A stretch of DNA of 64,000 nt from Bugula neritina. Its lineage: Eukaryota > Animalia > Bryozoa. Under the pieces are notes generated by a model. It was not told the origin of the DNA, searched no databases, and worked only from the letters and a program-made list of their open reading frames with translations. Where the stretch lies: contig OZ037770.1 of NCBI GenBank assembly GCA_964035545.1, positions 15,180,642 to 15,244,641 on the forward strand, read 5' to 3'. Shown here piece by piece: positions 41,941-64,000 of the stretch (the stretch's first letter is position 1; every line of letters begins with the position of its first letter). Both the position numbers and the translations under genes were made by a program.

Positions 41941-43699
41941 GCTGATTTTCTCGGATTTTTCATTAGGACTGCTGAAAACATTTGACAATCAGTATTACAG
42001 GAAAAATTTTATACTCATCAATTTTTTCACCGACATAAGATGTGATTATTGCTTAGAATCAAAATTATCAGCATGGAAATCAATGATAGTGGGAGTCATT
42101 TTTAAGAAATGTAGTGTTTCTATTTTCATTAACTTTAAATTATAAAACAAGTATTAATAATTAGAGATGTATGTGAATCTAGAAAATTAAAACAGAGCCC
42201 TCAGACTGTGTGAAAATAAAAGCAAGCTTCATGTTCTTTAACTAATAAGTTAAACTTATTGACTAATATTAAATTCAGTCAGCATCTTTATTTATAATAA
42301 TTATTGTATATCACTATTCTTGATCATTGTTCTCTAAGTCTATAATTATTTTTATTCCTATGATCATCACTATGTTCTGTCAGTAATACTGAAAACTGTA
42401 GAGACTGAAATTGAATGCCTATCAGTAAAAAATAAAAAGTAAATACAATAAAAGCTATCACTTTAGCAATCACAATGTAGCTATTACTATTACTCCTACT
42501 ATTAGACTAAGACTAAGAGTAAGACAAAGTGATAGCCTACTAATATTTGAAGCACAAACACGGAGTCTAACTCTTAAATTCAGTCATAGATAGACTTACT
42601 AGGCCTACTAACTAAAACAAGAGTATCGGTATGATAAAATTTTATCATATTCCTTATCGTAGTGACTATCACTCAATCAGTGAATCGGCATCAGTGTCAT
42701 CGTGATACTCATACTGATATTTAGTATTCACTGTGATATCTCAAGAGTAAAAAGCAACTGTAAGTGAGCAACAAACAAGAGATGGCACTGAAAGAGTAAA
42801 ATAATGACAATCCTATTAATCATTTAAAAACTATAACAATTAATAAATTAAGGTATCAATCACCACTTTGATGATATTCATATCCACTTTTTTTTAATAA
42901 CAGTTATTGAATTAACATTATCTTCATTCAAGAACATCCCATTCACTGATCCGGATGTTGAACGCAGTACGCTACTGTGTTGGAGTTATCTTCTTATTAT
43001 AAAAATAAAGTAATTATCAAGCTCCCTGCTGAAGAAAACAACTAATCCGTCATATAATTGTATTTTTTCAAATAAGCAAAAAATTATTAATATTATTAAA
43101 ACGCCTAAAGTATTATTTTAGTGATATACCGTCCAGCGTAATTTATATTACATATGAATTATAAGGGAGACAACTCTGAAGTAATGAAGTTCAGCAGCTG
43201 CAGCTTTATTTAGAGATTTAACTTTTCTTTCTAAGATTACCTGCCATTGTAGTGATATTAAAATGAAATATCTTTATTTTCTCCAAATATGGCTGGTAAT
43301 GGGTGAGAAAATAATTTTATTTGTATCTGAGTTGGTTAACAGTGCGTTTTATTGAAAAAATATTTTATAATAACAAAGTGCTTTTGCTAATAGTATGATC
43401 ACACAAAAGAGCACATTGATTTTCCCAGTAAAATATTATAATATTAATATAACATGGGGGAAGATAAAATACAACATGGAAGCAACCACGTATAGTGTAA
43501 AATTTAGAATGAATTCAAGTAAATTATTTTTCAGCCTTTTTCTGCTAGTTACTGCATTGGCAAGCAGTAATCAGCAATTGAAAATAAAAATAAAAATATT
43601 TTAAACCTCTTTAAAACACTTCAAGTTTTTATAAAAACATTAGGTAATATGTTTAACAATAAGTAATATAATTAGCTCTTGGGTTAATGATTCTGGCTC

Positions 43700-46600
43700 T
43701 CAGTTACTACCACTAACACCTGAGGTACTACTACTAACACCTGAGGTACTACCACTAACACCTAGGGTACTACCACTACCACCTGAGGTACTACCACTAG
43801 CACCTGAGGTACTACCACTAGCACCTGAGGTACTCCCACTAGCACCTGAGGTAGCTCTGGCAGCATTTGACTCAGTAGTGCTGACTTTGTACAGATACAA
43901 CATCTTCATTTCAGTGAGGATATTGTTGATGCTGGGTGAACTGAATTCAGCTGCCTTGTCATCTAGGCAATAGTGTAGGCTCAGTTTTCTAACTACTTGC
44001 TGAATCTAAAAGAAGACAACTTCAAAATTGACAAAATGTAAGCCAAACGAGACAACTTTGTTAGCGAATAAAGAAGCTACATAAGTCATTGTTTTGCAGT
44101 TCTGTGATATAACATTTCTTTCAGTTACCTAAAAGTTCAAAACTTAAATAACCTTCTGAAGATGTTGCAAGCATACAATGCTTTTGGTTTGTATTTTCAC
44201 AGGCAAAACATTTACTGTCGTCAAAACAAATTTATACATTCATGTACAATTATACATTTATGGCACAGATGTTATTTTTAATTTATGCAGCTTGATATAC
44301 GTTGTCAATATTTGTTATACTGCATGTAAGGAAAAGATGCATGTGTTTGAAACTAGAAGCTAACCATTTCAAACAGATCCTCCAAGTGTGTGTTAAAAGA
44401 GTGTCTGTAAAAGGCGAGAACTAATGCCCGAATCATCCAAGCTCCGGAATTTCGGTCTTGATGCATATTTCTACCTACAGCAGTAACTAGCAACTGTAAA
44501 CTCACAAGTTGCAACTTGCAGTGACTAAAACGCAAATAGCAATTAAGTTTGGCATATAGTTGACTGTTAACTTGAGGTTAATTGCCGGTTTAATATTGAC
44601 TACTTAGATTATTTTATTTGTTGGTTGATCCAGCTTAAGTTGTACTCAGTTAGTTTCAGAGATATTATTTCAATTTTTTTGCAATGATTGCTAAGTGAAT
44701 ACGTAGTTATAGCTCTACACTTTGGAGGTTTATCTGGTACTGAGAGTTTCAGCTGGAAAGCGCTATAAGATATTATAGACTAAAGCATATTTTGTTTTTA
44801 ACAGAAGTAATTTTTCTCCTATACATACTGGGCTGTGTAGCATTCATGATGATCATGTCTTCCATTTGCAGCCGATGTGAGGCAGACAACTCCAATGGGT
44901 CGTCATCACTTGGTATGTTGACAGCAGCAGAGTTTGTAACTGGATATGAATCTCCACTGCTGGATCCCATATACATAGTATTACACACATAGTAGACAGC
45001 ATGAAAGTCAGTAGTATAATGTTTTTAAACTGAAAAGTATGTCAATTTCCAAGTTTCATTTTATTTGAAACATGCTGGGGTAAAGTCTTAATGTAAAAAT
45101 AAATATTTGAAACACTTGCTATAGTGTCACGTGTCGGAATATCAATATTTTAAATGTCAGAGTGCCACAGCGTGAAAGTGTCAAAGTGTCAAAGTGTCAA
45201 AATGTCAGAGCGCCAAAGTGTCAAAGTGTCAAACTGCCAGGGTGTCAGAATATCACAGTGTCAAAGTATCAAATTGTCACAGTCTAAAATTCTGAAAATT
45301 ATCCAAGAAACTGAATCAAAAGTTTAGCCTTTAGTATAATGAACCAGCTAACCTGCTACTACTATCAGCACTAACTCTGACATGCGCCACAAGTGCAGGT
45401 GCTTGTGCTGTGCTCTCGGGTTCTTCAGGACTAGAAGTAGACTGGACTTCCATATTCTCTGAACCTGAGGTGTTCTCCTGGTCACTGAAAACCAGATTGG
45501 ATCCACTAAAGGTGAATATTGACAAAGCACGCAGTTCTTCTTCACGAGTAGAGACAGCGGCAGAGGCAGCAGATGCAGCAGAGGCAACTTCCTGTTGATT
45601 GAGTGTAGATGAGACGGTTGGGGGATGAGGATCCACATCCATTCCTTCCCCTTCACCTGCTGTGTGCGTAAGGCTGGTAGAGGAAGATTCTATTGGCTCT
45701 CCAGAGACCTCTACAATAAGAAAAGCAAGCTCGATGTGAAAGAGTGGCTTGGTATCATGCACATGGTTTCAAAATTAGAAGTATTTTGTTACAGTATGTT
45801 TGATAGAGAAAAACTGGTATGTGATAGCAGTAAAATGTGATTACTGTACTGCAAAATTATTTTATATGAATCTCTAAATTTCTAAATTAAACAAATTTAG
45901 CTAATTTTTTTTCATTCTTCAAGCTTTTCGCCTTTCATATCTTAAGCACAATTTGAAGAGTGTAAGCTATCTTTGCTAGTCACTAACTATAATAATTAAG
46001 GTAGAGGCAGGACAAAAGAGTATAATGCAACTAACCATTGGCTAAGCACTGGACTACCACCACTTTAGGTTTCTGTGCCATAAGAGGAAATCTATTGGCT
46101 GACAGGAGTTCAGTCACATGACTAATCTCCAGCTTGTCACCTGCTGCCCCATAAATGCTGTCGCGGCAGCCTTGACTTATGATGACCAGGAAAAACATCT
46201 TGTATACGCCATGAGCTTCAATCTGCGTTTCTTCAGCAATTGCTGTTTTCATTTCCTATATAAGCAATGGATTTCTACCTTTGATAAGCTCATACATGTT
46301 AGGTTAGATGCAAAGTGCTTATATATCGTTTCAGTACAAACGCAAATCTTCTCAGTTAGATTCTTAAACAGTAAAAAAATTGCATTTTAACTTAAAACCT
46401 ATAATTATAGCCGCATGTTTTATATAGTTTTTTAAGATATTACTTTGTTTTATTCAAGAAATAGACAATTCAACTGTTTAATTTGCTACTTGACTTAACT
46501 TAAATATACTAACTTCAGCAGTATAGCTTTTGTGTTCTCCCGTGACGACAAAGTCCAGCTTACTCAACATGTCCTTGACATTACTAAAGTCAACTTCGGA

Positions 46601-49600
46601 ACCAACTCTGGTGTTGTTGGAACTGTTGGAGATGATTAGTGCCCTCCCTCTCGGTGAAGACATTGGGTATTTCTAAAGTAAACTCACGTGTTCAGCTTAC
46701 TTCAAAATACTTTTTTGTGATGATGATTTAGCAGTGAGACTCAAAGATATGTGTAATACGTCAATCATTTGAGAGTTGCATTTAAAACTTGAAATACAGA
46801 GCTTCTGGAGACTGCTACTTTTAAGACTGTCATCAGAACGCACACAGGCACATACTATATATTATATTATTGCAAAAAGTAACTGTGATTCTACAGTAAA
46901 AGTATATATACTTACTAAAACTCCAGTTAGTGGTTGTCTTCTCATGTTTACATTTACCAGGTCCATTTTCATTTCGTTCTCAAGCTCATGGCTGATGAGC
47001 CAATCAAACATGGCAGATATGGCGTTCTGCTTTCGCTGATAGTCACTGATTTTAGCTAAAAACATTAAAGATACTCACTTAACTTTGCAGCAGTAGGCTA
47101 TACTGAATAATGATGTATATTTCTACCCAATAGCATATTTTGTAACAACTTAATGTATGATGATATTGATTTGATATGATGAAGTTTCATATATTTGTTT
47201 TATTAAAAATCTTTTCTATCTAACTCCATTTTCTGAATTGAAGGAAAACACTTAGCTCTTTACTGACCAGATTCTATCTCAAATAGGGAGTTCTGAAATA
47301 TTTCTTTTTCTGCTTCGTTGAGCTCTTTGCCTGAAACAAAATTTAAGCAGTTTCTAAACTTAATGTTGTGCAACTGTCAAATATGAGTCTTTTTTAAAAA
47401 TGCCTTTATTTTTTGCTCAATCATGAAACTCTTTTAAGTACCACAATCAGCAGGAATAAAGTGTTGTTTTGATATCAAGTGTCATTTAAGTAATATATAA
47501 TCTATATAATTATGTGAAATATACGTTTTATTTGGCAAATAATAAATAATATTATTAACAAGAATAATTGCCAAAATGCCTTACATACTCAACTATTTTT
47601 TAAAATTTGTTTTATCTTTTAGTGGTACACTGACAGAGATGGTGAGAAGTGTTTACAAGAATGAATACAAGAAGTTACATATGCAGATAAAATAATTGGC
47701 AAGGGTTGATGAGGGGAACTTACAGGAGAGGATGAGGAAAACTTATAGGGGTTGAAGAGGGAAGCATACGGGGTTGGGGCAAAGGAGCTTACAGGGGTTG
47801 ATGAAGGAAACCAACAAGAATAGATATACAAGCTTGCAAGGAAGAATGAGAAAAAATAAAGGGGTGAATGAGAAAAACTTACAGGGGTAGAAGAAGAAAA
47901 TTTACAGGGGTGGATGAAGGAAAGCTTACAGGGGTGGATGAAGGAAGCTGGAATCAGATCTGGATTCATAATATTTAAACATTTCCTCTCATCAACCGCT
48001 TCATTAATCCACGTAACACCAGAACTCTCTCCAGATTCAAGCACTTCTTCAATCTCGGCTAGGAAACCACTTTTCTCTAACCTACCAGGATCTGGACAGT
48101 CTTGCAGCAAGCAATGTGGACACAAATACTCACACAAATATTGTAACGCCCGCCATGATTGGTGGAGATATCTCATTATAGTCAATATGGAGTCTATAAG
48201 AACTTCCCAAGAACTGTGTATAGTGTTAGCACACGCTGATACTTTAAGCTGCATTTCGCTTTCCTCAGTCTTGTATTGCAATAAAAACTTTGTTAGAGAA
48301 TTTTGGGCCGCTAGACCATTTGAGCATGAGCTAATATTAAACGCACGCAGCCGATGTAAGTTTAGGAGTAGGATTGACATTTGATGGTACGCGTGGTGTG
48401 GTAACTTCAAACCTTTGAAAGTGAAACTTGTGCACAAAACCAGTGTACTGCCTCTAAGAAAGGAGATGTCAATTTCATGCCTTGCGAATGATGGGATCAG
48501 ATAAAGTTTTAAACCAGTTCTGCCGTCTTTGTGCTCATATAGCAAGTTGAAATGTTGAAGCATTTTGACAGCGTGTGAAAGTGCCAACTTGGATTCTGTT
48601 CTCACCAGATATTTAAACAGATGGTCGAGCAGTAAACTGGTTCTATGAAAAAAAGTCAGCCATTGCTTAAAGTCTTTCCTTTCAACCGTTGGTTCATTAT
48701 AACTTAGATATGGCTGGAAATTGTCTTCTCTAAAACTCCATTTTTTTTCTTCATCGTGGTTAAACACTATCTCAAGTAGCTCGACAATCATGTCCATATT
48801 GTGAAACACGTAGCTAGACAACTCCTCACTGTCTTCAAACCAAAGCACATACCCAGCCATATGAGCATATCGAAGGACATTTTTTATTTTAGCTTCTGTA
48901 ATGCCATCTTTCTTAAACTTAGCGTTTAGATCTCTCAGGGACAGGTGACTCGAAGTGTCAAACCTTTCTTTTTGGAGAAATTTAATAATTTTAAACCAAT
49001 TAAATGGAATGACTGTACGGCAATCTTTTTCTTGAATTTTATGCAATAACCGAGATGCTATCTTGTCAAATGTGGTGCTGGAGTGATTTCCTACTTCAAA
49101 AATATCTGCTTCAATGAACATCGGTTGATGTCTGTTTGTGAAGGCCTTTATTTCAACGCGACTATTACCACTTTGAAAGACTTTGGACTTCCATTGGTTG
49201 CAGGCTAATAGGAGCCGCTCTCGATAAGCAGTATAATTTGGCTCGCTAAAAGCATCTTGATGCGTGATAACGAGAATAGGGGATGTGAGTTGAGGGTACA
49301 CTAAATAGAAATGAGCAAACCAATTTACGACCAACTCCTTTGCTGCTGCCAGATCTCCGGATGCTGCCGTTAGTTGCTCAAAATGTTTCAGATTTACGAC
49401 AACAACTGGGATAGAGTTGCTGCGCAGGACAAGCTGATAAGTGGTTTGGTAAGCATCATCTCCTCCAAAATCAAATATCTGTACGGGAAGGCCGTCCAGC
49501 TCAATTTCAACAGAGCTAAACACCCGAGTTGTTTCGTCAAAAGGTGCATCTTCTTCTCTGTTTGTTAAAATTCTCATTCTACTTTTCAAGGACTGAACTA

Positions 49601-50621
49601 GACTGGTTTTGCCAGCCATTTTGCGTCCTACTACAGCTATGGTACATATCATGATTAGGGCTGAAGTCTCGCCTGTCGCAGCTTGGTCTCGGAAGAACTG
49701 CCTTATCTGCCCACACCCTAGATTAGCGACCCCTTCGTACGGTGGATGCTGGAGGTTAATGCAGCCATCACAGTCCAAATCAGTCAAAGTTTTAATAGCC
49801 ATCAGCTCTGGATCTAAATGCTTCAGCTCAACATTCTTGCTTATAACTAATTTCCGTAGATTTGTGAGCTGCAAAACTACTCTTGGCAATTCTACGTGAA
49901 AGCCGTTTCGTGGAATGTAGAGGCAGGACAGAGTGTCTTTACAGGCTTTCAAACTAAAAAGGAACAAAAACATTTAAATCAAATGAACTTGAAAGCTGAT
50001 TATAATACAATCTATTTGGTAATTTTCCTTTAAAGAAATTTTGGAAATTCAAAAACTTTATCCGCATTCAAAAACTGACGCAACATCAGGAGTGACTTTA
50101 GTTATTTATCAACTACAAGAGAGAAAGTACAGCTTTTATATTTCTTACTGATTTGATAATTATTACAACCTTCCAGGTAATGCTGAAAGCTCACACTTTC
50201 CAACATGAAGTTCTACAAGAGATTTTAGTCCGTAGAATATTTCTTCCGCAAGTTGCATCAGTGGATTGTCACTCAGATACAGAATCTCCAAGCTTTCTAA
50301 TCTGCAAATACTAAAATGACGTTCTGTTTTAGGATGAGCATATAGTTTGTTTCATTACCAATATTCTGTTCACATTCACACATTGTGATAACTTTGGTGA
50401 TAAAATTTCTATATTTAATTTGCAAATGGGAATACTACAAAGTTGATTTGGAAATTGCTAAATTTTAATTCTTGTGGCACAGTGAAAAAAATAACAAATA
50501 AGAAACACTATATCTAGAAAATTATATATAGGTCTATATATAATTATACCAACACATGCACGCATATACACATGCACGCATATACACATGCACGCACATG
50601 CATGCACGCACGCATGCACAT

Positions 50622-50668
<47 letters not shown>

Positions 50669-52984
50669 CACACATGTGCTAATAAAATGAAATGCGTTCG
50701 AGTCTACTTAGTGAGTCGATGATCTAAACTAATAAAACTTAAAGTTTTGAGAGGTCTACCTGGTGCAGGTATCGTACACAGATATTATACAATATCTACA
50801 GATCTACCTGGTGGTTATCATACATGACATATATCATACAGTGTCTTCAGATCTACCTGGAGGGCAGGTGGTTCATATTGTTCTTGCTGAGAGTTAAGTT
50901 TTTCAAAGAGTGTAAACTCTGGAAGATGTCATCTGGTAGCCCTGAGGAGAAGTCATTGTGACTGGTTACCAGCTTCTCTAAAGTGCTTACAAACCCGAGG
51001 CTGTGAAACAAACAATTAATATATCTCTGCTTATATCGGTGACAAATTAACAGTGAACATACAAACAAATAAATAATGTCTTGAAAAGTATATATAAGTT
51101 TAATATATATAGATATAAGTATAGTATATATTATAAATGTGTGCACAACATGTGTTTATATATATGGTATCTATTATATAATATTTACCATATAATATAT
51201 ACTATATATGTATGATATATGTTATGTAACTGACTGTAAGCATATTAACTTACCTGGTTGGTAGTGTAGTTAATTCACATCTGCCTATGTATAGTTTCCT
51301 CAAGGAGATCATGGAGTAAAACATGTCATCTGGAAGGTTGTTGAAGAAATGGTTTCTCCGTAAATCAAGTAGCTGGAGGTTGTATAATGCACACATACTA
51401 AAACATTACACAACTGGTTATACATGTATACAACAAGAAACCTTGTCAATTTACTAAAAATCCGACTACTTTCTGTGATGACTAAAGTTGAAGCAACAAT
51501 TTTACAGAAAATCATAAATTTTTTATTGAAAATTTATTTAGCAATAGAGAAAACACAATCATAGTTAAACTATAATAAAGTTTTTAACTATACATTTGTT
51601 CCATGTAAACTTTTATTCATTAAAACAATTAGACATTTTTCTTAATCTCTTGCATAGGATGCTGTTTGTTGTAGAGAGTTTTATACTGATCAACTCTGTT
51701 TAAATTAACTGTTTTCTAAAGTATTTATAACTTTGTGTTGTCAAGCCTGAAAGCTACTTTTTTACTTTAAAAACCACAAAATCAACTTTTTTATTAGCTA
51801 GGTCAACAGTGCTAAAATAAGACAGAAAATATATAAGTCAATGACAAACATACATGTTTGTAGACTGAGAACCAAGGATAATAGTTAGATTTTGGTCTTA
51901 CAACAACGTACCCACTTGACACTTTAGTCAAGCCACAACCTTGCAGCTTCAATTCTCTCAACTCCTTCATAGACCAAAACATTTTATCAGAGAGAGCATT
52001 TTCCAGCCTGTTGTTGTCTAAATATAGACAGTTTAATTGCTCCAGCCCTGTGATACTAAGAAGATGGAAATAATATGAGTATAACGAGTGTAAGAGAATT
52101 GACACAAGATTACATTTCTTAGCTAAATCAGATTTAAGGTTGCAGAGTTTAGACTATTAGTCTTAAAACTAACTAGCCACACAGCAACTAGCTGGTCTTA
52201 CTTTTTATCTCAATTTTATTTGGTAACCTAAGTTCTGTTCTTGCTACTGACATGCAAATAATGAGTGGTAATATGTAACCCCCAACCTTTCTGGGAGTTC
52301 TCTCAGCTGACAGCTACTCAAGTTGAGATGTCTCAGTGTTTGTTGGCACGACTTGAAAACACTCGGCGAAATACCAGTCGACAAATCATTTCCTTCCAAA
52401 TCTATCTTTTCTAAATACTGCAGTTTCTGTAACCTGTAGAAAAATTGCATATATCAACATTTTTATACTCACAGTAACATTTACAGTACTGCAAGATATT
52501 TGCTGCTTCAAACTTTTAAAGATTTATATAGTCTAAACATGTAGAACTTATTCTTTGAAAACATTAGGTATTTGAATAGCAGACTATTTATATTACATAA
52601 TATAGAGATAAACAATCTTGATGTTTATTAAAATTCAAGAGAGGTTGACTGATAAAACGCAATGTTACAGCATATTATTATTATTATACAAGTTATGATA
52701 AAGGCGTTGACTGTAGACTAGCGAGCTCACCTGTTTAAAGTCAGTTTAGACAGGACAACCTTTCTAATGCACAGCTCCCTTAGATATGGTGCCAGTTTGG
52801 TGAAGTTAGGCGACTCTCCTTTGAATATCATGTGAGTTATGAATGCCTCTTCATATCCTGTCAGCTCTTCCTTTATTTCGTACTTACTCTGTAATGAGCA
52901 CTTCACCTCATAGTTGAATAGAGCTGTGGTTGGTAGAGCTTGTTTAGTGTGTCTGTACCAGATGTTGTATTCTCTTACAGACAT
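43700..52984 (-). CDS. MFHAS1/MASL1-like ROCO protein (LRR-ROC-COR) fused to a C-terminal catalytically degenerate caspase domain (paralogue B), about 1494 aa
   Basis: 15 phase-compatible exons: 52984-52731; LRR exons 52433-52287, 52055-51912, 51397-51254, 51000-50857, 50310-50170; 49953-47930 (last LRRs, ROC: GRKMAGKTS, DFGG, THQD; COR: GYVLWFEDSEELSSYVFHN, CPHC); linker 47330-47268, 47055-46916; caspase large subunit 46672-46514, 46255-46036; inter-subunit linker 45710-45353; small subunit 44959-44829, 44474-44365, 44005-43700 (TGA). Summed CDS 4485 nt. Confidence 0.85.
43705..43852 (-). repeat. Coding 21-bp repeat giving a (STSGASG)n C-terminal tail on paralogue B
   Basis: About 7 copies of ACCACTAGCACCTGAGGTACT, in frame in the last exon. 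Confidence 0.85.
50552..50675. repeat. (GCAC)n microsatellite
   Basis: Intronic simple repeat. Confidence 0.9.
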
Positions 52985-54141
52985 GGCTAGCTCAGGTAAA
53001 ATCTTTAGGTGTTTAATCCATTCTCACCTTTGAAATACAATGCATTATTACTTCTTCATATTCCAAGATGCCACAAAGTAGAATAAAGTTATTATAATAT
53101 AATGGAAGACAAACATCTAAGAGTATAAAACATTATAATTTTGCATTTGATATTGCAAATTGTAATTAGTATACTATTGCATTTTGATCATTTGTAATTA
53201 CATAATATGCACAAAAAGACTTGGCAAGTAAAAGTTTTTTAAAAGGTTTAGTCCAGTTATGATAAAAGTATGCAATCAATCAGTAAGTATAACAGCTTGT
53301 AGCTAGCCTTCTTAAAGATGCTGTCATATAAACTACCGAAAAGTATCAAAATGAACTCACTTGCTTACAGGAGTCATTATTGACATCTGTTAGCAGGTTA
53401 CCTGCCAACAGATGTCAATATCAGTCACTATTTTGAATAGTACACATAAGTAGCATGCTACTAATTGAATCCCTCCAAAAAATTTGAATATAACAATGCA
53501 ACTTGAAGCTAAACAATCATTCATAACCAAGTAGACTATATGATTGGCTAAAAAATTGTTGAGACCAGAATAGCTTTTGATAGCAGCAAAAGCTCTCAGT
53601 TTGTTTGCTGAGCTAGCTAAGTATTGTTTAGTAAAATACTCTTTTGTCTTTTGTAAAACACAAACAACATGGCCGTAGATCACTAAACAGCAGTTTTTGT
53701 AGCAATTGCTAGTAGCATGAACAGCTGTTCGTTTGTGTATGAGAGAAAGCAATCACTGCTAAATTTTAACTTACAGAAAATTTGAATCTGTTCACCTGAG
53801 AACAGATCATAAGGATTTCTCAACTTTTTCAATAAAACACAAATATATTTCTTCATAACAGTGGTAGCACATGAGCAAATTTTTTTAAAAGTACAATTAA
53901 GTATACAAAGTGTAAATATTGCAAAATATATGAATTGTAAATCAAAGTATAAAATACAATTTACAACAGCCGTTAAGAATTTGTTTACTAAAATTTGCCT
54001 GGAATACACTTTTTTTCAAGAAATTGAAATGCAAGTAAATATTGTGTTTTAAAGTGTTAAAAACTTGATCACCCCTGCTGTAGTCATGTGATCATTTAGT
54101 TTTGAGCATTTGAAGATTAAGGAATACTAGAAGGCTATTTT

Positions 54142-57100
54142 CTAAAGGACTGCTTCTTCTGGGACCAGGAAGACCTTTCTCATATGAGTCAGACGACATC
54201 TGATCTCAGGTATCTGGCCGTAACCTCCTTCGACCTTTTTCTTTTCATAATTGTAGTTTGCACTGTACCTTGCAACCACCTGCTGAATCTACAAACATTA
54301 GGAGTATGAAAAGTACTGGAGAGCACATTGAAGGTTGCTATTAGTATAATGAATGGCACTAGCAGGTTGTTATTAGTATATTGAATGACACTAGCAGGTT
54401 GTTATTAGTATAATGAATGGCACTAGCAGGTTGTTATTAGTATGATGAATGACACTAGTAGGTTGTTATTAGTATGATGAATGGCACTAGCAGGTTGTTA
54501 TTAGTATGATGAATGGCACTAGCAGGTTGTTATTAGTATGATGAATGACACTAGCAGGTTGTTATTAGTATGATGAATGGCACTAGCAGGTTGTTATTAA
54601 TAATATGATGAATGGCACTAGCAGGTTGTTATTAGTATGATGAATGACACTAGCAGGTTTTTATTAGTATGATGAATGGCACTAGCAGGTTGTTATTAGT
54701 ATGATGAATGGCACTAGCAGGTTGTTATTATTATGATGAATGGCACTAGCAGGTTGTTATTAGTATGATGAATAACACTAGCAGGTTGTAAGCCTAGGGC
54801 CACACTGTGCGTATTTTCGCATGCGAAAATTAAAATCACGAGTAGCAAAGGTGTCCACTGTAGCGTCAGTGATGCGTGATAAATAAAGCTTTCATTTTTA
54901 AATCGCACTCGCTTTCAATAAAACGCAATTTACTGGAATATAGCACTAAATAAAGAAATTGGGCTCGCTGAATAGCTACCAGCCAATTAGGTGACTACGA
55001 CAGAGACGATTCGCACTTGCGTTGAAAATGCAGAGCGACAAGTGCGAAGGTTTTCTCAACGCGCACAGTGGACACCTTTGCTACTTGTGATTTCAATTTT
55101 CGCATGCGAAAATACGCACAGTGTGGCCCTAGGCTTAGTATGATGAATGGTAGTCAGCAATGAGCAATGCAGATGCTTTTACTGTGTTAGCTGTCAGCCA
55201 TAAGACAGAATAGGGGAAGATCAGCTTTAAAATTGAGCCAAAACATAAACAGCAGCCATAACAGTCATATTTTTTGCACGATAATTGTAGGCCTATCACT
55301 ATATTATCTGTATATGCAGCTTAACATGAAAACATAACTCCAACAGCATGGCCTATATATTTTTGCTATGTTTTAGTTACTGCCCAGATAGAAATAATCT
55401 AGCAAGCAATAATGTTACTGTCACAAATTCTGAGTGTACATATACCTATGAATAGACTTACGGGGTTTTTCCTAATGATTATACACGAATGTTCATAAAT
55501 ATTCTAGACTGATCAAAGAAATGGGTCATTGTTCATTGTTACTGTTTTGGTTAGTCATGTTAACTACTGCCCAGCAATGTAAACAAGGTATTGCGCAATA
55601 ATTGCGAAATAACCATGGAAATTCCAATGTTTTGTTTTGTTTTGATTCTCTATAAATAGTATTGGCATGTGGGGAATGTTTCCTACTAGAATCTTCTATA
55701 CTGGAATGCTTGAGAATGTTCTAGAGTTTTTTGTTTACTATAAATACTGAGGCAGTTGTGTTTACGAATCAGTTCATTCTTGGAGTTCATTTTTATTAAT
55801 TCATCTGTGCATATCTTACTAAAGGAATAAAGTCTACTTATATCCACAACTCTATTTACTCACAACTGGATTAGCAAGCTGTATGCTACTTGTCTCTACA
55901 CTTCTGACTACCAGACTTTTCGAACTCGTCACACTGCTACCAACAGTTTTGTGACAATTGGGGGCTGCTCCGGGAAGTCTCAGTCGCACACAGGGAAGTT
56001 ATTAGTTACAACGTGAGTATACACAGGATTAATTAACAGTTGTTGAGACATTATGGCGTTGTTGGAAAGAGTGACACAGATGGGTAAAGATCTTGGACTG
56101 GTGGATGACAAGCTCATAGCTTTTGTTGAAAAGAACCTACCCATTTTTGCTGCACAAGAAGAAAAAGAAAAGGACCGAGAGGAAAAAGAAAAGGACCGAG
56201 AGGAGCGGAGATTAGAGCGTGAGGCGGAAAGGATCAGGCAAGAAAATGAGAAAGCCTTAATGGAGATGAAGATAAAAGCTGACCAGGAGGCAGAAGAGAG
56301 AAGACAACGGCATGAATTAAATATGGAAAAGCTGAAAGCTGACACAAGTTTGGAGCACTCAAGACATGAGAGCACCAGGTTAGAAATAGCTAACAAACCA
56401 AAACCAAAAATACCATTCTTTGATGAGAAGGTGGATGAAATGGATAGCTATTTAGAGCGGTTTGAGTGGGTTGCCGAAGGATGTAACTGGGACAAGGGAG
56501 ATTGGCCCTACCATCTCAGTCAGTACCTAAGGGGTACGGCAACAGAAGCTTACATCCGGTTGTCACCTACCGATCGTAGAGATTATAAAAAAGTCAAAGA
56601 AGCCTTGTTGGAGCGCTTTAACTTGACTCAAGAGGGCTACAGAAAAAAGCTCAGAGAGGCAGAAGCTTACGAGGATGAAACTCCTGCCCAACTATTCACT
56701 AGGATAGAAAGTTATGTGCACAAGTGGGTGGAGCTTTCAGGGGGCATGGACATAGCCAAACTAGTGGCGACTGAACAATTTATATCATCATGCCCAGACG
56801 ACCTAGCTGTGCATTTAAAGCAAAGTTCCTACAACAGCAGTGAGGATATGTGTGATGCAGCGTCGCTGTTCTTGCACGCTCGTGGAAGGAAACTAGCAAA
56901 GACAAAGAAAACTAATACAAAAAGGATGGAAAACACACCTGCCGGTAGCATGAATGCTGAACAAGGAAGTAAAAGCGATGGGGCATGCTTCATCTGCAAA
57001 GATAAGTCACACATTGCTCGTAACTGCCCACGGCGAGGGAAGAAGTACTGTTCACATTGCAAGATGAACAACCACAATACGTCAGACTGCAGAAAGTATG

Positions 57101-60100
57101 GTGGGAGGTCAGTGCATGCTGCTGCTGCAATAGGGACTACTCAGAATAAGACTGTGGTCATAGATCCAGGAATCTCATCTAAAGTGGAAGAACCTACAGA
57201 AATCATAGTTAATGGTAAAAAGTTTGTCAACGCTGCTGTCTGCAAGAATGGACCTAAATTCAAAGATGGGGGCACAGCGATATTTGATGCGGAAGTTAAT
57301 GGCCAACGAGCTACTGTAATGCGCGACACCGGCTGTGGTTGCATTGTAGTCAATGCAAAGTATGTGCAACCTCAACACTTGACTGGAGAATCAGTTTATC
57401 TGAATATGGCTGATGCAAGTGTTAGGGAGGCTCAGTGGGCACTTATCTCAGTGCGCTCACCATTTTACAATGGTGTCGTCAAAGCTGCAGTAATGGACAA
57501 GACGATTTGTGACCTGCTTATTGGGAATGTGGACGGAGCAAGATCAGCTGACCAGCCGCTAGAAAACTGGAAGGACTGCGCCGTAACCACAAGAGCTCAA
57601 GCTGTCAAGGAGAAGTCAGGAGACAAACCACTAATGATTGATTCAAATGCTAACCCATTAAGTATAGGGAAAGATGAGATAGCCAGACTGCAGAGGGATG
57701 ACCCCACATTGGAGCGTTTCTTCGATGCAAAAGAAGTGAAGGAGAAAAAGGGATGCACCACTAGGTTTGTGGTGAGGAATAAGATTCTGTACCGTGAGTA
57801 CACCGACTCCGAGTCTGCCAGTGTAAAACCCGTTAAACAACTCATGGTACCCAGTTCACTGAGGAAGGAAGTTCTACAGAAAGCTCATGACTGCACAATG
57901 AGCGGACACCTAGGAGTAAAGAAAACCACTGATAGAGTGCTTTCCAACTTCTTTTGGCCAGGACTAAACGGAGATGTCGTACGTTTCTGTCAGTCATGTG
58001 ACATTTGCCAGAAGACGGTGAAAAAAGGCTCAATCATGAAAGTTCCAGTACAGGAAACTCCACTAATTGACACCCCATTCAAGAGATGTGCAATAGACCT
58101 AGTCGGACCAATTAACCCTCCAAGTGAGAAAGGACACCGCTACATCCTAACTTTAGTTGACTATGCTACAAGATACCCTGAAGCTACACCATTGAAGAAC
58201 ATTGACTCAGCTACTGTAGCTGAAGCGCTGCTTGACATATACAGTCGTGTTGGGATACCAGAGGAGGTGATAAGCGACCAAGGAACTCAATTCATCTCGG
58301 ACTACATGAAAGAGTTTACCAGATTACTTGACATGCGACAACTTCCTACTTCACCATACCATGCAATGGCCAATGGACTTGTGGAAAAGTTCAACGGAAC
58401 CCTCAAGAGTATGTTAAAAAAGTTGTGTGCTAAAGAGCCAAGACAGTGGCATCGATTCATCAATGCGGCTCTATTTGCATATAGAGAAGTCCCACAGGAA
58501 TCAACAGGCTTCGCCCCATTCGAGTTACTCTATGGAAGAACTGTACGTGGACCAATGTACATCCTGCGACAACTTTGGACAAAGGAAGACACTGCCGATG
58601 AAGTCAAGACCTGCTATCAACATGTTTTTGAATTGAGAGAGCGTTTAGATGACATGATGGAAATGGCACTAGCTTCGCTAAAAGACAGTCAAAAAAGATA
58701 CAAACACTATTTTGACAAGAAAGCTAAGCAGAGAGACTTCAAACCTGGTGACAAAGTGCTCATTCTTCTACCTACGGATGGAAATAAATTGCTGATGCAT
58801 TGGCAAGGACCATTCAATATTGAGGAGAAAGTCAGACTGAATGACTACATTATCAACATTAGAGGCAAGAGGAGAACATACCATGCCAACATGCTGAAGA
58901 AATACTTTGAACGGGAGACGCCTACCGACTCTATGACTGCTGGAGCTGTGAGGACTCTAGATGCTGCTGGTGCTGGAATTATTGATCACGATAAGGAAAG
59001 AGAAGAAAGCCAAGATGATTTGTTGGACCTGTACAGTAAGAAACAGCAGAATGATGAGATGGGCTATGTATTTACAGAACTTCAGAATCAAGGTGGAGTC
59101 AATCAAAGGAAAGGACAATGTTGGAGCCGATTATCTAAGCCGAATTGACTCAGAATTTTAAGTAGTTAGGAGAAATGATCAAGATAATTTCTCTTAGAAT
59201 GGGGGGTTGTCACAAATTCTGAGTGTACATATACCTATGAATAGACTTACGGGGTTTTTCCTAATGATTATACACGAATGTTCATAAATATTCTAGACTG
59301 ATCAAAGAAATGGGTCATTGTTCATTGTTACTGTTTTGGTTAGTCATGTTAACTACTGCCCAGCAATGTAAACAAGGTATTGCGCAATAATTGCGAAATA
59401 ACCATGGAAATTCCAATGTTTTGTTTTGTTTTGATTCTCTATAAATAGTATTGGCATGTGGGGAATGTTTCCTACTAGAATCTTCTATACTGGAATGCTT
59501 GAGAATGTTCTAGAGTTTTTTGTTTACTATAAATACTGAGGCAGTTGTGTTTACGAATCAGTTCATTCTTGGAGTTCATTTTTATTAATTCATCTGTGCA
59601 TATCTTACTAAAGGAATAAAGTCTACTTATATCCACAACTCTATTTACTCACAACTGGATTAGCAAGCTGTATGCTACTTGTCTCTACACTTCTGACTAC
59701 CAGACTTTTCGAACTCGTCACACTGCTACCAACAGTTTTGTGACAGTTACTGAAAATAATAAAAATGATTTTTCAAATAAAGATTTTAATTGTTCAACTG
59801 TTAGAAAAAGAATAAAATCTAGCAAGATATTAAAATAACAAAAAGTTTCAGTTTAAAAATACTTTATTTTTAAACTGAATTTTAGTGAAAATAGACACAT
59901 AGTTTGTTACCATTTTGAAAAGGGTGTGAAGATCAAGTTGATGAGCGTATTGGTAGAAGGCGACCACAGAGGCTCGTATTAACCAGGACCCAACTTTCTT
60001 GTCCCTGAAGGCTACATATCCTGATAGAAATAGGCTATAATTGTTAGTGTTTCAACATTTACTAGAATAAAACTAAAACTAAAAATACATGATACTAGTA

Positions 60101-63100
60101 ACTATTTGAGTAATACTGAATCGGTGTGATTACCACAATTAGTTCTAGCTTGTCGTCTGCTATAACTTAGCAATTGAAAAAAAATAAATGTTTTAAACTA
60201 ACTATTTTTTGATGGTCAAGTTCAAGTGCCATTCTACGCATGCAGTCATTTTACCTAATTTAGTACACATTGGAAATCTCTAGTTTTTAGCTATTTCTTA
60301 CAATTTAGCTGCTAATAAACATGGGTTTTTGCTCAAAACTAGTAAAATGTCAATAAATACACCTAAATAATTTGGTTCGTTTTAATCTTGCTTGATTTCT
60401 CATGTTTTTCCTAATTATTCAGCTACTTTTAATTGCGGACACAATCAAATAGCTGCCTCAAAGTCAGCAGTAGTTTACCTGGCTGACTCGCCTTAATCAT
60501 CAACAAGTCGTCTCCTGCAAGAACTTCATTCTGGTTTGACTTGACAGGTTCAGTGTTGGAGGCCCCAGAGCTTCTAGGAAGAAAGAGAGTGACTTAAGTT
60601 ACCATAGATATAAGGTACAGCTTTATATGTCTAAGTGACTATATTATTTAGTTTAATCAAGTGTTGGCATAAGTAATTTTGACTATAGCATCGTAAAAAC
60701 TACTACCACTCGTGAGTTATACTATACAGTGTATGCTGAAAGTGAATTACACATAAATATGCTAATAAATTTGTTATAGTAGAGTATGTACAGCATGTTT
60801 GACTCATTATCCCAGGTATTCATGGTGTCGCTGAAAGAGATCCACTGCTCTTCTGAAAAGCTTGGGTCCTCATCTACGCTCCCCTCACTACTCTCTTCAA
60901 ACTCATCATGGTCATCAGGCAAATCGACTAGACTGTCCTTGTTAACTAGAATGTTATTTTGAGCATTAAAAAATAATAAACAGCTGGAACAAAACTACAA
61001 TAAAACAAAGCTTAAAGGATTGCTCTATCTTGTCTAATAAATGGCCATTTAGGTAAAACACACATAATATTGTGTTTTTCTAAGCATGCATTGACAAAAA
61101 GCATTTGACCAAAGGTAGAAAAAGTTAGTTGAAGTTGAGGGTGTAGATTGGTAACAGCCAAAACGCCGATTTTGAAATGAGCTGGGAACTGTGACGTAAC
61201 AGCGCCAGCATTCCTGCTGGTCACGTGACTATACAAATGAATAACTATAGAAATATGACTGTGAGATGTAATCTTTTAGCTTGCAATTTGTATATTTATA
61301 GAAGTGCAAATGTGAATTATCTCAATCTATAGTTTTTTGACATTTTAAATAACATGTATGTGAAAACATTAGGCTATATTTTGCTTGTAAACATTAGAAA
61401 AAAGCCTTGCAAAAACATGCATTCTTTAGGATGAATGCCTGCGATCGATCTAAACTAAGTCAGATCGTGCAATATTACGGGCACACCAAAGCTGACCTAT
61501 ATAGCGCACTGTAACTGCTTGAGCGTAATTGGTTGATGTTGTGCCCAGCAACCTTGAATACTAGCGTTATAGTTAGCACGTGCAGCATAGTTACTGGCGT
61601 TCACACGTCACGTATTAGGCTATTCTTTTTCATGGCTGAAAATTTTACCTCCCTCAAAATTGGAATTTTGAAAAGCTGTTTTCTAGGCACATATCCCTTT
61701 GCAAAGCCACAATTGTTTGCATACACATTAGATTATAGTTCATAATTATAATGTGATTGTAATAAACTAAGATAGAGCAATCCTTTAAGGGGGCAATGCA
61801 AATGTAACAGATTGCAGCAATACATATAATCTGTTTGTGGCAAATTGAGTTAAATATGAAGCACAACCTGTATGTATGTTAAAGCATGTCTCACCAAACA
61901 TGTTGCGGTTGTGCTTTTCAATAAATAAATGCAAAACTAAACTCTGTGTAAAGATTTACAATCACCCTAAGAATAAATAAAATATACCTCCAGAGCAACT
62001 TTGTATGATCACAACTTTGGGTTTTCCTGTCATGGCAGGAAAATTCTTCGGGGAGATCAAACTCAACAGATCATCCATGGAAACCTCGTCATCTGGTCCA
62101 CCACATCCGCCAATCTTATCTTTCCTTCCATGACTCATTAAGACCAGAAAGAACATTTTGTATGACTCATGCTCCTGGAGGCGACTCTCTTGAATGATTG
62201 CTTCTTTCATCTCCTGTAAAGATTTAAGTAAGTAGTGTTGGAAACTCAAGCTCATGCACTATATTGGTTTATAAAAACAATGGTCTCAGTCTCAACCTAA
62301 AATAGCATTATACCGTAAAATACAAAATTTTTCACTTTTTTTAGTGTTGAAGGTTTTTAGTGTTTGTGAGTGCAATTACTTTAAGAATACTAAAATAGTA
62401 TTATTGATGATCGTTCTTTCTAATTATCTACCAGACAATTGTTAAAGATCGCAGCAGCTTGTCAACAATGAAATATGCTTTAACCACAAAGAGCATGTGT
62501 GTCATTGATTATATAAATTCCTTACTTATATAGTAATACGTAAAATGATGGTTATATAATAGTTTTGCTAAACAGAAGTGGTGTGGTGGTTCGTGGAACT
62601 ACCAGCAGCACAACATGTAGGGTCGCGTAATTGACCCGGAACAATGGATAGCCAATTAGCGTATTCGATAGTTAGCAGCAATTATAGTTTCCTGCTGCTA
62701 AGTCAGTCGAAGCTAGAGTGTCAAATAGATTAGATGTGTAAATTGTCTGAATATATTGTATCGTTTTTATAATGTATAATTGTGTGTAAAATATACTCGT
62801 TCACTCGACTTATCCTGGTGCAGTTCTATAGCGAATAAGTAGACTCTCTGGATAGCATATCAACCCTAAATCTGGAAAACATAACAGTACTACATAAACA
62901 ACCTTGTGCTCACCTCAGCAGTGTAGTCTTTGTGTTCTCCTGTGACGACAAAGTCCAGCTTACTCAGCATGTTCTTGACATTCTGAAAGTCAACTTCAGA
63001 ACCAACTCTGGTGTTGCTGGAACTATTAGAGATGATTAGTGCCCTCCCTCTGGGTGAAGACATGGGGTAAACTTGAGGCATCTGCAATTTTAGAAAAAGT

Positions 63101-64000
63101 CAAATATTAGTCCTAAAGTCTTTCTCAAGTAGTTCAATTACACAAATTACCTACAACATATGACTTAGATTTACCATTCTAGCATCTACTTCTAAATCAT
63201 CTTCATCTAGTTTTCTCTTTCTTTTCCTAGAATAAAAATCTTTTGGTTCCATGATGATTTCAGCCGTGTTCTCATTCTCAGCCAGCCATCCTGCAATCTT
63301 TTTGATAGCTGTGCCTCGGGCAGTGTACTCGTTAGCTTCATCTACAATTCATAATCGCGATTCAGAAAAGATTTTCTAGCTGCATTTTATATTTTATAGC
63401 TGAAGTATTTGGAATTTAGTGGATTAATACAATTTAACTAGTACTACTACTACTGCTTAAATGTCCATCTTGTATGTCATATCATTACAATAAGAAACTT
63501 TGATATTGAAGAGGTATTAAAATTTGAAAGATATTATATGCATGAGTTGTTCAGCCAGAAACTCACATTTCTCCAGAAACTGGTACAGCTTTTCTTGATC
63601 TTCAAAGCTCAGATCTTGGCCTGAACATAAAGTTATGTATTTGTTATGCTAATGTTTTAATGACATGCCATTTATATATGCTGTTTTGTCATAATAATAG
63701 TATCTAGATGCTAATTCTGCTATACCCAATATAAATTCAAACAGTCTATGACAGGAATTTGATAAAAATACTAACACAATTTTCTATGCAGCTGTAAAGC
63801 TGCTGTTGTTGCACCAATCATGCATTGATTTCAATTCTAGAAAGTTGCACAGCTTCAATGCAAGGAAAACGAATGACAAGGTCTTCTCACGTAGAGAAAA
63901 TCATGACTCATCAAACAGGTCATCAGTAATATTGGTGCAACAAAGTTTAAAAAAGTTCCAAATTTTATGGCAATACTCACAAGGCCACACCAGGACACTC
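54142..64000 (-). CDS. 3' part of a second ROCO-caspase fusion gene (paralogue A) with intact caspase catalytic residues; 5' part lies beyond the window
   Basis: Exons (64000)-63981 (SVLVWP, homologous to the COR end ASFIHP of paralogue B), 63620-63567, 63341-63175, 63081-62914 (PRGRALIISN...RVGSEVD), 62213-61988 (LMSHG...KPKVVIIQSCSG), 60945 to about 60800 (donor uncertain), 60573-60479 (DLLMIKASQPG), 60020-59911 (GYVAFR...GSWLI), 54288-54142 (QIPEIRCRLT...TAG). Intron positions and phases match paralogue B. Confidence 0.85.
54341..54788. repeat. About 32-bp minisatellite (CTAGCAGGTTGTTATTAGTATGATGAATGGCA)n
   Basis: About 14 tandem copies in the last intron of paralogue A. Confidence 0.9.
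54789..55137. mobile_element. MITE with about 75-bp TIRs inserted into a minisatellite
   Basis: TAAGCCTAGGGCCACACTGTGCGTATTTTCGCATGCGAAAATT.../...AATTTTCGCATGCGAAAATACGCACAGTGTGGCCCTAGGCTTA. TA (or TAA/TTA) flanks. The minisatellite resumes after it. Confidence 0.85.
55419..55956 (+). repeat. 5' LTR
   Basis: Direct repeat of 59208-59745; TG...CA ends; TATAAA near 55739 and AATAAA near 55826. Confidence 0.95.
56053..59148 (+). CDS. Gag-protease-integrase polyprotein of the Gmr1-type retrotransposon (no RT domain)
   Basis: 1031-aa ORF: SCAN-like Gag region, two CCHC knuckles (CFICKDKSHIARNC, CSHCKMNNHNTSDC), aspartic protease RDTGC, integrase HHCC (HDCTMSGHLG...CQSCDIC), DDE (IDLVG, SDQGTQF, NGLVEKFN) and GPF motif. 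No YxDD motif. Confidence 0.93.
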   Translation: MALLERVTQMGKDLGLVDDKLIAFVEKNLPIFAAQEEKEKDREEKEKDREERRLEREAERIRQENEKALMEMKIKADQEAEERRQRHELNMEKLKADTSLEHSRHESTRLEIANKPKPKIPFFDEKVDEMDSYLERFEWVAEGCNWDKGDWPYHLSQYLRGTATEAYIRLSPTDRRDYKKVKEALLERFNLTQEGYRKKLREAEAYEDETPAQLFTRIESYVHKWVELSGGMDIAKLVATEQFISSCPDDLAVHLKQSSYNSSEDMCDAASLFLHARGRKLAKTKKTNTKRMENTPAGSMNAEQGSKSDGACFICKDKSHIARNCPRRGKKYCSHCKMNNHNTSDCRKYGGRSVHAAAAIGTTQNKTVVIDPGISSKVEEPTEIIVNGKKFVNAAVCKNGPKFKDGGTAIFDAEVNGQRATVMRDTGCGCIVVNAKYVQPQHLTGESVYLNMADASVREAQWALISVRSPFYNGVVKAAVMDKTICDLLIGNVDGARSADQPLENWKDCAVTTRAQAVKEKSGDKPLMIDSNANPLSIGKDEIARLQRDDPTLERFFDAKEVKEKKGCTTRFVVRNKILYREYTDSESASVKPVKQLMVPSSLRKEVLQKAHDCTMSGHLGVKKTTDRVLSNFFWPGLNGDVVRFCQSCDICQKTVKKGSIMKVPVQETPLIDTPFKRCAIDLVGPINPPSEKGHRYILTLVDYATRYPEATPLKNIDSATVAEALLDIYSRVGIPEEVISDQGTQFISDYMKEFTRLLDMRQLPTSPYHAMANGLVEKFNGTLKSMLKKLCAKEPRQWHRFINAALFAYREVPQESTGFAPFELLYGRTVRGPMYILRQLWTKEDTADEVKTCYQHVFELRERLDDMMEMALASLKDSQKRYKHYFDKKAKQRDFKPGDKVLILLPTDGNKLLMHWQGPFNIEEKVRLNDYIINIRGKRRTYHANMLKKYFERETPTDSMTAGAVRTLDAAGAGIIDHDKEREESQDDLLDLYSKKQQNDEMGYVFTELQNQGGVNQRKGQCWSRLSKPN
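59208..59745 (+). repeat. 3' LTR
   Basis: Direct repeat of 55419-55956; followed by TSD GTTAC. Confidence 0.95.
60248..60430. mobile_element. Truncated copy of the 19963-20352 MITE family
   Basis: Colinear similarity to 19963-20147 (TAATTTAGTACACA, TTTTTAGCTATTT, CAAAACTAGTAAAA, CAATAAATACACCTA, CCTAATTATTCAGCTACTTTT). Confidence 0.75.

What the first reader, a model, noticed from the sequence alone, without database searches (positions are those of the whole stretch)
43700..64000. Tandem active/inactive ROCO-caspase pair (caspase-8/cFLIP-like or paired-receptor logic)
Seen: two same-strand paralogues about 1.2 kb apart (stop 54142, next ATG 52984) with matching intron positions and phases. 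Paralogue A keeps the catalytic His (LMSHG), Cys (IIQSCSG), large-subunit Arg (RVG), and small-subunit Arg and Ser (GYVAFR...GSW), so a full Asp-specific S1 pocket. Paralogue B has SQG (His>Gln), QCLAN (Leu at the nucleophile position), SRNMHQ (Arg lost) and GAW, yet its frame is open. Established: pseudo-caspases such as cFLIP heterodimerise with and tune their active paralogue. Inference: B is a retained regulator, decoy or co-sensor of A through ROC-COR heterodimers, which would be a new two-gene system. Caveat: the LRR-ROC of A is outside the window and is inferred from the homologous COR-end and linker exons.
Basis: partly seen in the sequence, partly recalled or inferred. Interest (0 to 1): 0.92.

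Follow-up and report, generated by a model that had tools for sequence, protein, structure and literature searches.

The report
Paired Roco-caspases with complementary dead domains
Two neighbouring moss-animal (bryozoan) genes each join a leucine-rich-repeat region, an LRRK2-like GTPase switch and a caspase in one protein, but one has lost the motifs of the switch and the other those of the cutting site, so they may work only as a pair.

Summary
A (1343 aa, start outside the window) and B (1491 aa) are tandem 15-exon LRR-ROC-COR-caspase genes with all 14 intron phases matching. The genome is close to Bugula neritina, where both genes are also adjacent. B lacks the catalytic His, Cys, Arg341 and Ser347. 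It is nonetheless spliced in four RNA-type runs, and its caspase is under purifying selection (dN/dS 0.24). New: A, the intact caspase, has a degenerate ROC (G1-G4 lost; dN/dS 0.58), while B's ROC is intact (0.11). A and B are sister clades. A more distant bryozoan sample holds orthologues of both, and the closest outgroup gene keeps both motif sets, so each copy lost a different activity. One caspase exon is homogenised between A and B. Best reading: a heteromer in which B is the switch and A the protease (about 45%); no interaction or activity was tested. Caveats: the distant B orthologue has lost G2/G3, and dead copies occur elsewhere in this family of over 85 genes. The scan had already noted the fusion and other pseudo-caspase copies in this genome. 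I found no paper on the family.

The parts
63981..64000 (-). Gene A: 3' end of the large ROC-COR exon. The exon continues to window-equivalent 65929; six more exons (N-terminal cap plus LRRs) reach the ATG at window-equivalent 68507 (L023 6149). ROC is degenerate: G1 GLENSERI, G2 Thr lost, G3 NI-S, G4 TNKG
   Evidence: model keeps the Roc-COR fold
63175..63620 (-). Gene A exons 8-9 (63620-63567, 63341-63175): helical linker between COR and caspase
62914..63081 (-). Gene A exon 10: start of the caspase large subunit with Arg179; homogenised with B exon 10
61988..62213 (-). Gene A exon 11: catalytic His (LMSHG) and Cys (IIQSCSG)
   Evidence: Pfam Peptidase_C14 E 1e-11
59911..60945 (-). Gene A exons 12-14 (60945-about 60804, donor uncertain; 60573-60479; 60020-59911): acidic intersubunit linker and small subunit with Arg341 and Ser347
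55419..59745 (+). LTR retroelement in A's last intron: identical 538-bp LTRs, 1031-aa gag-protease-integrase ORF (56053-59148), no RT domain found; absent from the B. neritina reference contig
54142..54288 (-). Gene A last exon and stop
   Evidence: 100% aa identity to the B. neritina orthologue
50170..52984 (-). Gene B exons 1-6: N-terminal cap and LRR exons (52984-52731, 52433-52287, 52055-51912, 51397-51254, 51000-50857, 50301-50170)
   Evidence: dN/dS 0.09
47930..49953 (-). Gene B exon 7: last LRRs, intact ROC (G1 GRKMAGKTS, G2 ETT, G3 DFGG, G4 THQD) and COR
   Evidence: covered by RNA contigs
46514..47330 (-). Gene B exons 8-10: linker and start of the large subunit (Arg179 kept)
46036..46255 (-). 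Gene B exon 11: pseudo-catalytic exon, SQG (His>Gln) and QCLAN (Cys285>Leu)
   Evidence: dN/dS 0.22
43700..45710 (-). Gene B exons 12-15 (45710-45353, 44959-44829, 44474-44365, 44005-43700): long Ser/Ala linker, small subunit without Arg341/Ser347, Ser-Gly repeat tail, stop
   Evidence: splice joints seen in RNA contigs

Best explanation
A and B arose by tandem duplication of one bifunctional LRR-ROC-COR-caspase and then lost opposite activities. They most likely work as one heteromeric receptor-protease. B supplies the guanine-nucleotide switch and a folded but inactive caspase partner; A supplies the only Asp-specific active site. B's nucleotide state would set whether COR-mediated A:B dimers form. 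That would bring the two caspase domains together and turn A on with a single active site, as cFLIP-L does for caspase-8. Shown here: gene structures, reciprocal motif loss, sister relationship with a doubly intact outgroup, selection on both, splicing of B, and a spliced A junction in the same run. Established knowledge: Roco proteins dimerise through COR under nucleotide control; initiator caspases are activated by dimerisation. Inferred: loss of each activity from loss of its motifs, physical A:B contact, activation rather than inhibition, and an immune or cell-death output.
For: Reciprocal motifs: among 58 aligned family rows, G2 Thr is kept in 54, G3 Asp in 52 and G4 Asp in 55; A lacks all three plus G1 GK[ST]. 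The tree puts (A+P0057) and (B+P0002) as sisters (95/93), with P0003 next (98/97). A contig of the P0003 cluster carries an intact ROC and SHG, FNACSG and SYRN. ROC dN/dS is 0.58 in A against 0.11 in B (Fisher p 0.001); caspase core 0.11 in A and 0.24 in B, both well below 1. The pair is adjacent in two other assemblies. Each is single-copy while relatives expand in clusters. Eight B splice joints appear in RNA contigs, and a spliced A junction appears in run X6. Both models fold as Roc-COR plus caspase. COR dimerisation: PMC6337361.
Against: No interaction, co-localisation or activity was tested, and no multimer prediction was available. The distant B orthologue P0002 keeps G1 and G4 but has lost the G2 stretch and the G3 Asp, so B's switch may not be canonical everywhere; its caspase exons were not recovered. 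Linkage in that species is unknown (separate short contigs). A Watersipora gene with a dead ROC and intact caspase has no called neighbour within 10 kb. The A and B ROC-COR exons are only about 25% identical. The genes lie head-to-tail, unlike most plant NLR pairs. The caspase dN/dS difference between A and B is not significant (p 0.08-0.19).
Confidence: 0.45

Rival explanations
1. B is a brake. A, having no switch, would dimerise and fire on its own. B sequesters it in an inactive heterodimer until a signal or GTP loading releases it (guard or short-cFLIP logic).
For: Same data as the best model. In the model proposed in PMC6337361, Roco proteins cycle between monomer and dimer with nucleotide state, which could release A rather than activate it.
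Against: B keeps Arg179 and a large-subunit exon nearly identical to A's, which suits a cooperating partner. Nothing here separates activation from inhibition.
Confidence: 0.2
2. A and B do not depend on each other. A is a shared executor for other family members, for example the reported pseudo-caspase cluster on C6, or a constitutive protease. B is a non-catalytic GTPase scaffold. Adjacency only reflects their origin by tandem duplication.
For: The family has over 85 members. Dead ROCs occur elsewhere (P0055, P0060, P0064). The 23 ROCO loci at C6 3.58-6.26 Mb give no in-register Cys motif match, in line with earlier scan notes of Cys>Ser copies.
Against: The two losses fall on the two sister branches of one duplication whose outgroup is doubly intact, and both copies are kept in a species about 38% identical in ROC-COR.
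Confidence: 0.2
3. Neutral partition: complementary degeneration in a pre-existing homodimer locked both copies in. The A:B pair does just what the single ancestor did, with no new regulation.
For: Heteromers of paralogues are a common by-product of duplicating homomers (abstracts of PMC6711710 and PMC11066126). LRRs of both genes are conserved rather than diversifying (dN/dS 0.09-0.13).
Against: It is not exclusive of the best model: it explains the origin, not the mechanism. B's long linker and A's remodelled ROC suggest further change.
Confidence: 0.1
4. The 'dead' sites are alive in another way: B cuts through Cys284, or A's ROC binds another nucleotide.
For: B's Cys284 is kept in both sibling lineages; the distant A orthologue keeps the G1 Lys.
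Against: B also lacks the His, Arg341 and Ser347, and the intron position fixes the register. A in Bugula lacks G1, G2, G3 and G4, and its ROC is not distinguishable from neutral evolution (p 0.19).
Confidence: 0.05

Closest known systems
Roco proteins (MFHAS1/MASL1, LRRK1/2, Chlorobium tepidum Roco)
   Same: LRR-ROC-COR order; best structural matches are LRRK1, LRRK2 and CtRoco; NCBI names Watersipora relatives 'MFHAS1 homolog'.
   Different: A caspase takes the place of the kinase; A's ROC has lost G1-G4; the review searched has no mention of caspase.
Runella Roc-COR-CHAT protease that activates bacterial gasdermin (10.1101/2021.06.07.447441)
   Same: A Roc-COR unit fused to a caspase-clan protease with a cell-death output.
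   Different: Bacterial CHAT protease, one gene beside its substrate; no dead paralogue described; common origin not tested.
Caspase-8 / cFLIP (own knowledge)
   Same: Linked paralogues, one caspase intact and one lacking the catalytic dyad yet conserved.
   Different: No DED prodomains; assembly would be through ROC-COR; here the active partner has lost a second activity that the dead partner keeps.
Plant paired NLRs, e.g. CHS3-CSA1 (PMC11298796)
   Same: Adjacent LRR-NTPase-effector genes of which one supplies the catalytic effector; they act as hetero-oligomers.
   Different: ROC-COR GTPase, not NB-ARC; head-to-tail; in CHS3-CSA1 both P-loops are required, whereas here the executor's P-loop is gone; LRRs here are not diversifying.
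HER2/HER3 and GABA-B1/B2 receptors (own knowledge)
   Same: Reciprocal division of input and output between two paralogues of one heterodimer; this is what the pair would work like.
   Different: Unrelated membrane receptors; analogy only, and the heterodimer is unproven here.

Membership tests
Roco proteins | ROC followed directly by COR | tested here: met
   Pfam Roc E 2e-5 and COR-A E 5e-7 in B, both just under cut-off; both models match LRRK1/2 and CtRoco at E 1e-15 to 1e-22
Roco proteins | G1-G4 GTP-binding motifs, gene B | tested here: met
   GRKMAGKTS, ETT, DFGG, THQD
Roco proteins | G1-G4 GTP-binding motifs, gene A | tested here: not met
   GLENSERI in the window copy (GFENLERM in the B. 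neritina orthologue), no G2 Thr, NI-S, TNKG: a pseudo-GTPase Roco
Roco proteins | GTP binding, hydrolysis and COR dimerisation | not testable with these tools
   needs biochemistry
Caspases (C14A) | Caspase fold with large and small subunit | tested here: met
   PF00656 above cut-off in exon 11 of both genes; fold matches; B's small subunit was modelled from a truncated public protein at low confidence
Caspases (C14A) | His-Cys dyad and Arg179/Gln283/Arg341/Ser347 pocket, gene A | tested here: met
   alignment to caspase-3
Caspases (C14A) | His-Cys dyad and Asp pocket, gene B | tested here: not met
   His>Gln, Cys>Leu, Arg341>Gln, Ser347>Ala; Arg179 and Gln283 kept
cFLIP / caspase-8 subfamily | Tandem DED prodomain | tested here: not met
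   the N-terminus is LRR-ROC-COR; no DED among Pfam hits for either orthologue
cFLIP-like regulators (functional class) | Heterodimer with the active paralogue that changes its activity | not testable with these tools
   no multimer prediction or assay available
Paired NLR receptors | STAND (NB-ARC/NACHT) ATPase domain | tested here: not met
   the NTPase is ROC-COR
Paired NLR receptors | Conserved genetic linkage of the two genes | tested here: inconclusive
   adjacent in three Bugula assemblies (window); distant orthologues are on separate short contigs
Pseudogene | Broken frame, no expression, neutral evolution (gene B) | tested here: not met
   open frame, spliced RNA contigs, dN/dS 0.15 overall

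The most novel reading that the evidence does not exclude
A and B form an obligate two-gene intracellular receptor of a kind not described in animals: the Roco GTPase switch of one chain controls, in trans, the caspase of the other, within a bryozoan family of about a hundred single-chain LRR-Roco-caspase receptors. It would be a natural split experiment showing how a Roc-COR unit drives its effector domain across a dimer.
Probability: 0.4. Interest if true: 0.9.

Novelty: new variant of a known kind. Interest (0 to 1): 0.72.

Why it matters
How the Roc-COR unit controls its effector, in cis or across the dimer, is still debated for LRRK2 and its relatives (PMC6337361). A natural pair in which switch and effector sit on different chains, with a simple protease read-out and a doubly intact outgroup protein as control, makes that question directly testable. 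It would also give bryozoans, whose immunity is little studied, a candidate inflammasome-like system not built on NLRs, and a clean case of complementary loss of two catalytic activities after duplication.

Tried and rejected
Rejected: B as a pseudogene (open frame, spliced, purifying selection). Rejected: A as a caspase-only gene (ROC-COR found upstream). Rejected: a one-residue deletion moving B's catalytic Cys (intron position fixes the register). Rejected: an assembly artefact (the pair is seen in two other assemblies). Rejected: a recent duplicate (about 25% identity in ROC-COR; orthologues of both in a distant species). Led nowhere: homologue search with A residues 330-1341 (blank because of length limits); two metagenome scans and one protein search for the distant orthologues' caspase exons; five paper searches for the family or the pair; the ESM Atlas gave only MFHAS1-like clusters under 0.9. 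The family survey rests on 50 short loci fetched earlier, public proteins, and two motif-count pattern searches, which print about 30 matched letters per site. The A exon 1 row is a misalignment (that exon is outside L061) and was dropped. dN/dS values are simple pairwise Nei-Gojobori counts.
Full report
Setting. The window is G000:C6:15180642-15244641 of a 216-Mb animal genome. The two genes match Bugula neritina KAF6038145.1 (EB796_003546, P0164, 91% identical to A) and KAF6038146.1 (EB796_003547, P0152, 92% identical to B). Those two lie in the same order about 1.3 kb apart on contig VXIV02000463.1. A JGI contig also runs from A into B's first exons. The window therefore comes from B. neritina in the broad sense or a close sibling lineage (inference).

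Observation check. I built both gene models from the sequence. B has 15 exons from ATG 52984 to stop 43702-43700 and gives 1491 aa without a stop. A has 15 exons and gives 1343 aa. Its last eight lie in the window (63620 to 54142); its first seven lie beyond it, up to window-equivalent 68507. All introns are GT-AG and the 14 phases are the same in both genes (2,2,2,2,2,2,1,1,0,0,1,2,1,0). Two of A's donors (exons 9 and 12) may be a few codons off, as the public orthologue differs there. A has Arg179, His237, Gln283, Cys285, Arg341 and Ser347 in register with caspase-3. B has Gln for His, Leu for Cys, Gln for Arg341 and Ala for Ser347, and keeps Arg179 and Gln283. The phase-1 intron lies the same number of codons after Gln283 in A and B, so B's Cys is at 284 and is not a shifted nucleophile. 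The spliced models were joined only inside local scripts. Searches used single exons by reference or public proteins by id; the joined model was not sent to any search tool.

A's ROC has lost the GTP-binding motifs: G1 reads GLENSERI, the G2 Thr is gone, G3 DFGG has become NI-S with a one-residue deletion, and G4 reads TNKG. B's ROC has GRKMAGKTS, ETT, DFGG and THQD. Among 58 aligned family rows, G2 Thr is present in 54, G3 Asp in 52 and G4 Asp in 55. Predicted models of the two B. neritina orthologues (mean pLDDT 78 and 79) both match LRRK1, LRRK2 and C. tepidum Roco, and caspases. So the dead domains appear still to fold. B's small subunit was modelled from a public protein that lacks the last exon and is of low confidence. 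The pattern is reciprocal: A has a dead switch and a live protease, B a live switch and a dead protease, judged from motifs alone.

Selection. Against the B. neritina contig (dS about 0.15-0.28), B's caspase core has dN/dS 0.24 (p 5e-6 against neutrality), its pseudo-catalytic exon 0.22 and its ROC 0.11. A's caspase core has 0.11, its COR 0.38 and its ROC 0.58, which is not distinguishable from 1. The ROC contrast between A and B is significant (p 0.001); the caspase contrast is not (p 0.08-0.19). The LRRs of both genes are conserved (0.13 and 0.09), unlike receptors in an arms race.

Expression. Contigs of four runs from two studies, guessed by the tool to be RNA and about 92% like the window, cover B's exons 7-15 and leave the introns empty. 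They show the eight predicted joints, seven with CT..AC ends in at least one run and one (exon 8/9) slightly blurred by substitutions. A loose end in run X6 at 46669 reads, reverse-complemented, as LDEDDSLPQV, which is the spliced exon 9/10 junction of the A orthologue (my reading). Both genes are thus transcribed in one sample. Cell-level co-expression is unknown, and the runs are from the sibling lineage.

History. A search of protein representatives gave orthologues in JGI sample 3300003318: P0057 (38% to A) and P0002 (36-40% to B), on separate short contigs. Trees of the ROC-COR exon join A with P0057 and B with P0002, make these two clades sisters (95/93), and place P0003 from ENA assemblies next (98/97). 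The A branch is long, so the topology deserves a test with more taxa. An 11.6-kb contig of the P0003 cluster has an intact ROC and caspase exons with RPGS, SHG, FNACSG and SYRN (that contig's COR is split into two called ORFs, while others of the cluster are whole). So the ancestor most likely had both activities. P0057 keeps the G1 Lys but lacks the Ser/Thr, G2, G3 and G4, and shares A's G3 deletion, so A's loss is old. P0002 keeps G1 and G4 but lacks the G2 stretch and the G3 Asp. This weakens strict complementarity in that species, and its caspase exons were not found.

Concerted exon. Exon 10 (start of the large subunit with Arg179) differs between A and B at only 16 of 156 bases in the window and 8 of 156 in B. 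neritina. Orthologues differ at 10-14, while exon 11 differs at 98 of 219 and the flanking introns do not align. Third-position differences are 9/52 against 47/73 (p 2e-7). Repeated gene conversion limited to this exon is the simplest reading. Whether selection keeps this surface alike is unknown.

Family context. The genome holds at least 86 further ROC-COR exons of this type, many with caspase exons just downstream, mostly in clusters. A's best paralogue is B (172 bits against 135). All 19 paralogue ROC exons I could read have an intact P-loop; they were chosen by likeness to B, so the sample is biased. A pattern for Cys in the canonical register has 101 matches, including A and not B. The 23 loci at C6 3.58-6.26 Mb match neither this pattern nor the shorter one without Cys. 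Watersipora subatra has many intact LRR-ROC-COR-caspases and at least one with a dead ROC and intact caspase, P0064, with no called neighbour within 10 kb. Single dead domains are therefore not rare in the family. What is special here is the complementary loss on two single-copy sister genes.

Mechanism. Roco proteins dimerise mainly through COR and are proposed to cycle between monomer and dimer with nucleotide state (PMC6337361). Initiator caspases are switched on by dimerisation, and cFLIP-L can activate caspase-8 in a heterodimer (own knowledge). In the doubly intact ancestor, a signal at the LRRs would change the nucleotide state, alter dimerisation and fire the caspase. In the pair, A cannot read nucleotide and B cannot cut, so the simplest way both stay under selection is an A:B heteromer with B as switch and allosteric partner and A as protease (45%). 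Rivals: B as brake (20%), independent roles or other partners (20%), neutral partition with unchanged output (10%), and cryptic activity (5%). Ligand, substrate and biological output are unknown. Immunity or cell death is inferred from the architecture and from the bacterial Roc-COR-CHAT protease that cleaves gasdermin (10.1101/2021.06.07.447441).

Comparison and novelty. B is a Roco protein with a pseudo-caspase; A is a caspase with a pseudo-GTPase Roco unit. Neither is a cFLIP or an NLR by membership: no DED, no STAND domain. The pair would work like caspase-8/cFLIP at the protease, like paired NLRs in layout (PMC11298796), and like HER2/HER3 in its reciprocal split (own knowledge). I found no paper on animal Roco-caspases or this pair in the library searched, which lacks most subscription journals.

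Verdict. Real, conserved and expressed; richer than first described; mechanism plausible but untested. New variant of a known kind, interest 0.72.

Noticed in passing
window 55419-59745: LTR retroelement with identical 538-bp LTRs and a single 1031-aa gag-protease-integrase ORF with no reverse transcriptase domain by Pfam; a very recent insertion, antisense in A's last intron, absent from the B. neritina contig. Observed only.
   Followed up: partly
window 54238-54883 and 54789-55137: A 32-bp minisatellite and a MITE-like element with 73-bp inverted arms in the same intron of A.
   Followed up: no
window 62914-63069 and 46514-46669: One caspase exon is homogenised between A and B while its introns and the next exon are saturated; why only this exon is unexplained.
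   Followed up: partly
L023 about 6320-9500 (minus strand): A LINE-like element (endonuclease and RT frames broken by a stop) ends about 170 bp upstream of A's ATG and could affect A's promoter in this lineage.
   Followed up: no
window about 41000-41960 (minus strand) and below: Next gene downstream of B: a Rab-like GTPase (GDRNVGKTT, WDVVD), probably a RABL6 homologue by my recollection; not tested.
   Followed up: no
window 43700-43860: B ends in a Ser-Gly-Thr repeat tail (8-codon unit) that varies in length among RNA contigs.
   Followed up: no
L023-L027 (C6 15.26-15.29 Mb): Several long low-complexity repeat ORFs (mucin-like) upstream of A.
   Followed up: no
genome-wide: Intact-Cys family members vary strongly at residue 283 (Gln, Glu, His, Val, Leu), which hints at varied substrate preference across the Roco-caspase family.
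   Followed up: no
P0055, P0060, P0064: Other bryozoan Roco-type proteins with degenerate G1/G3 in separate clades: pseudo-GTPase Rocos arose more than once.
   Followed up: partly
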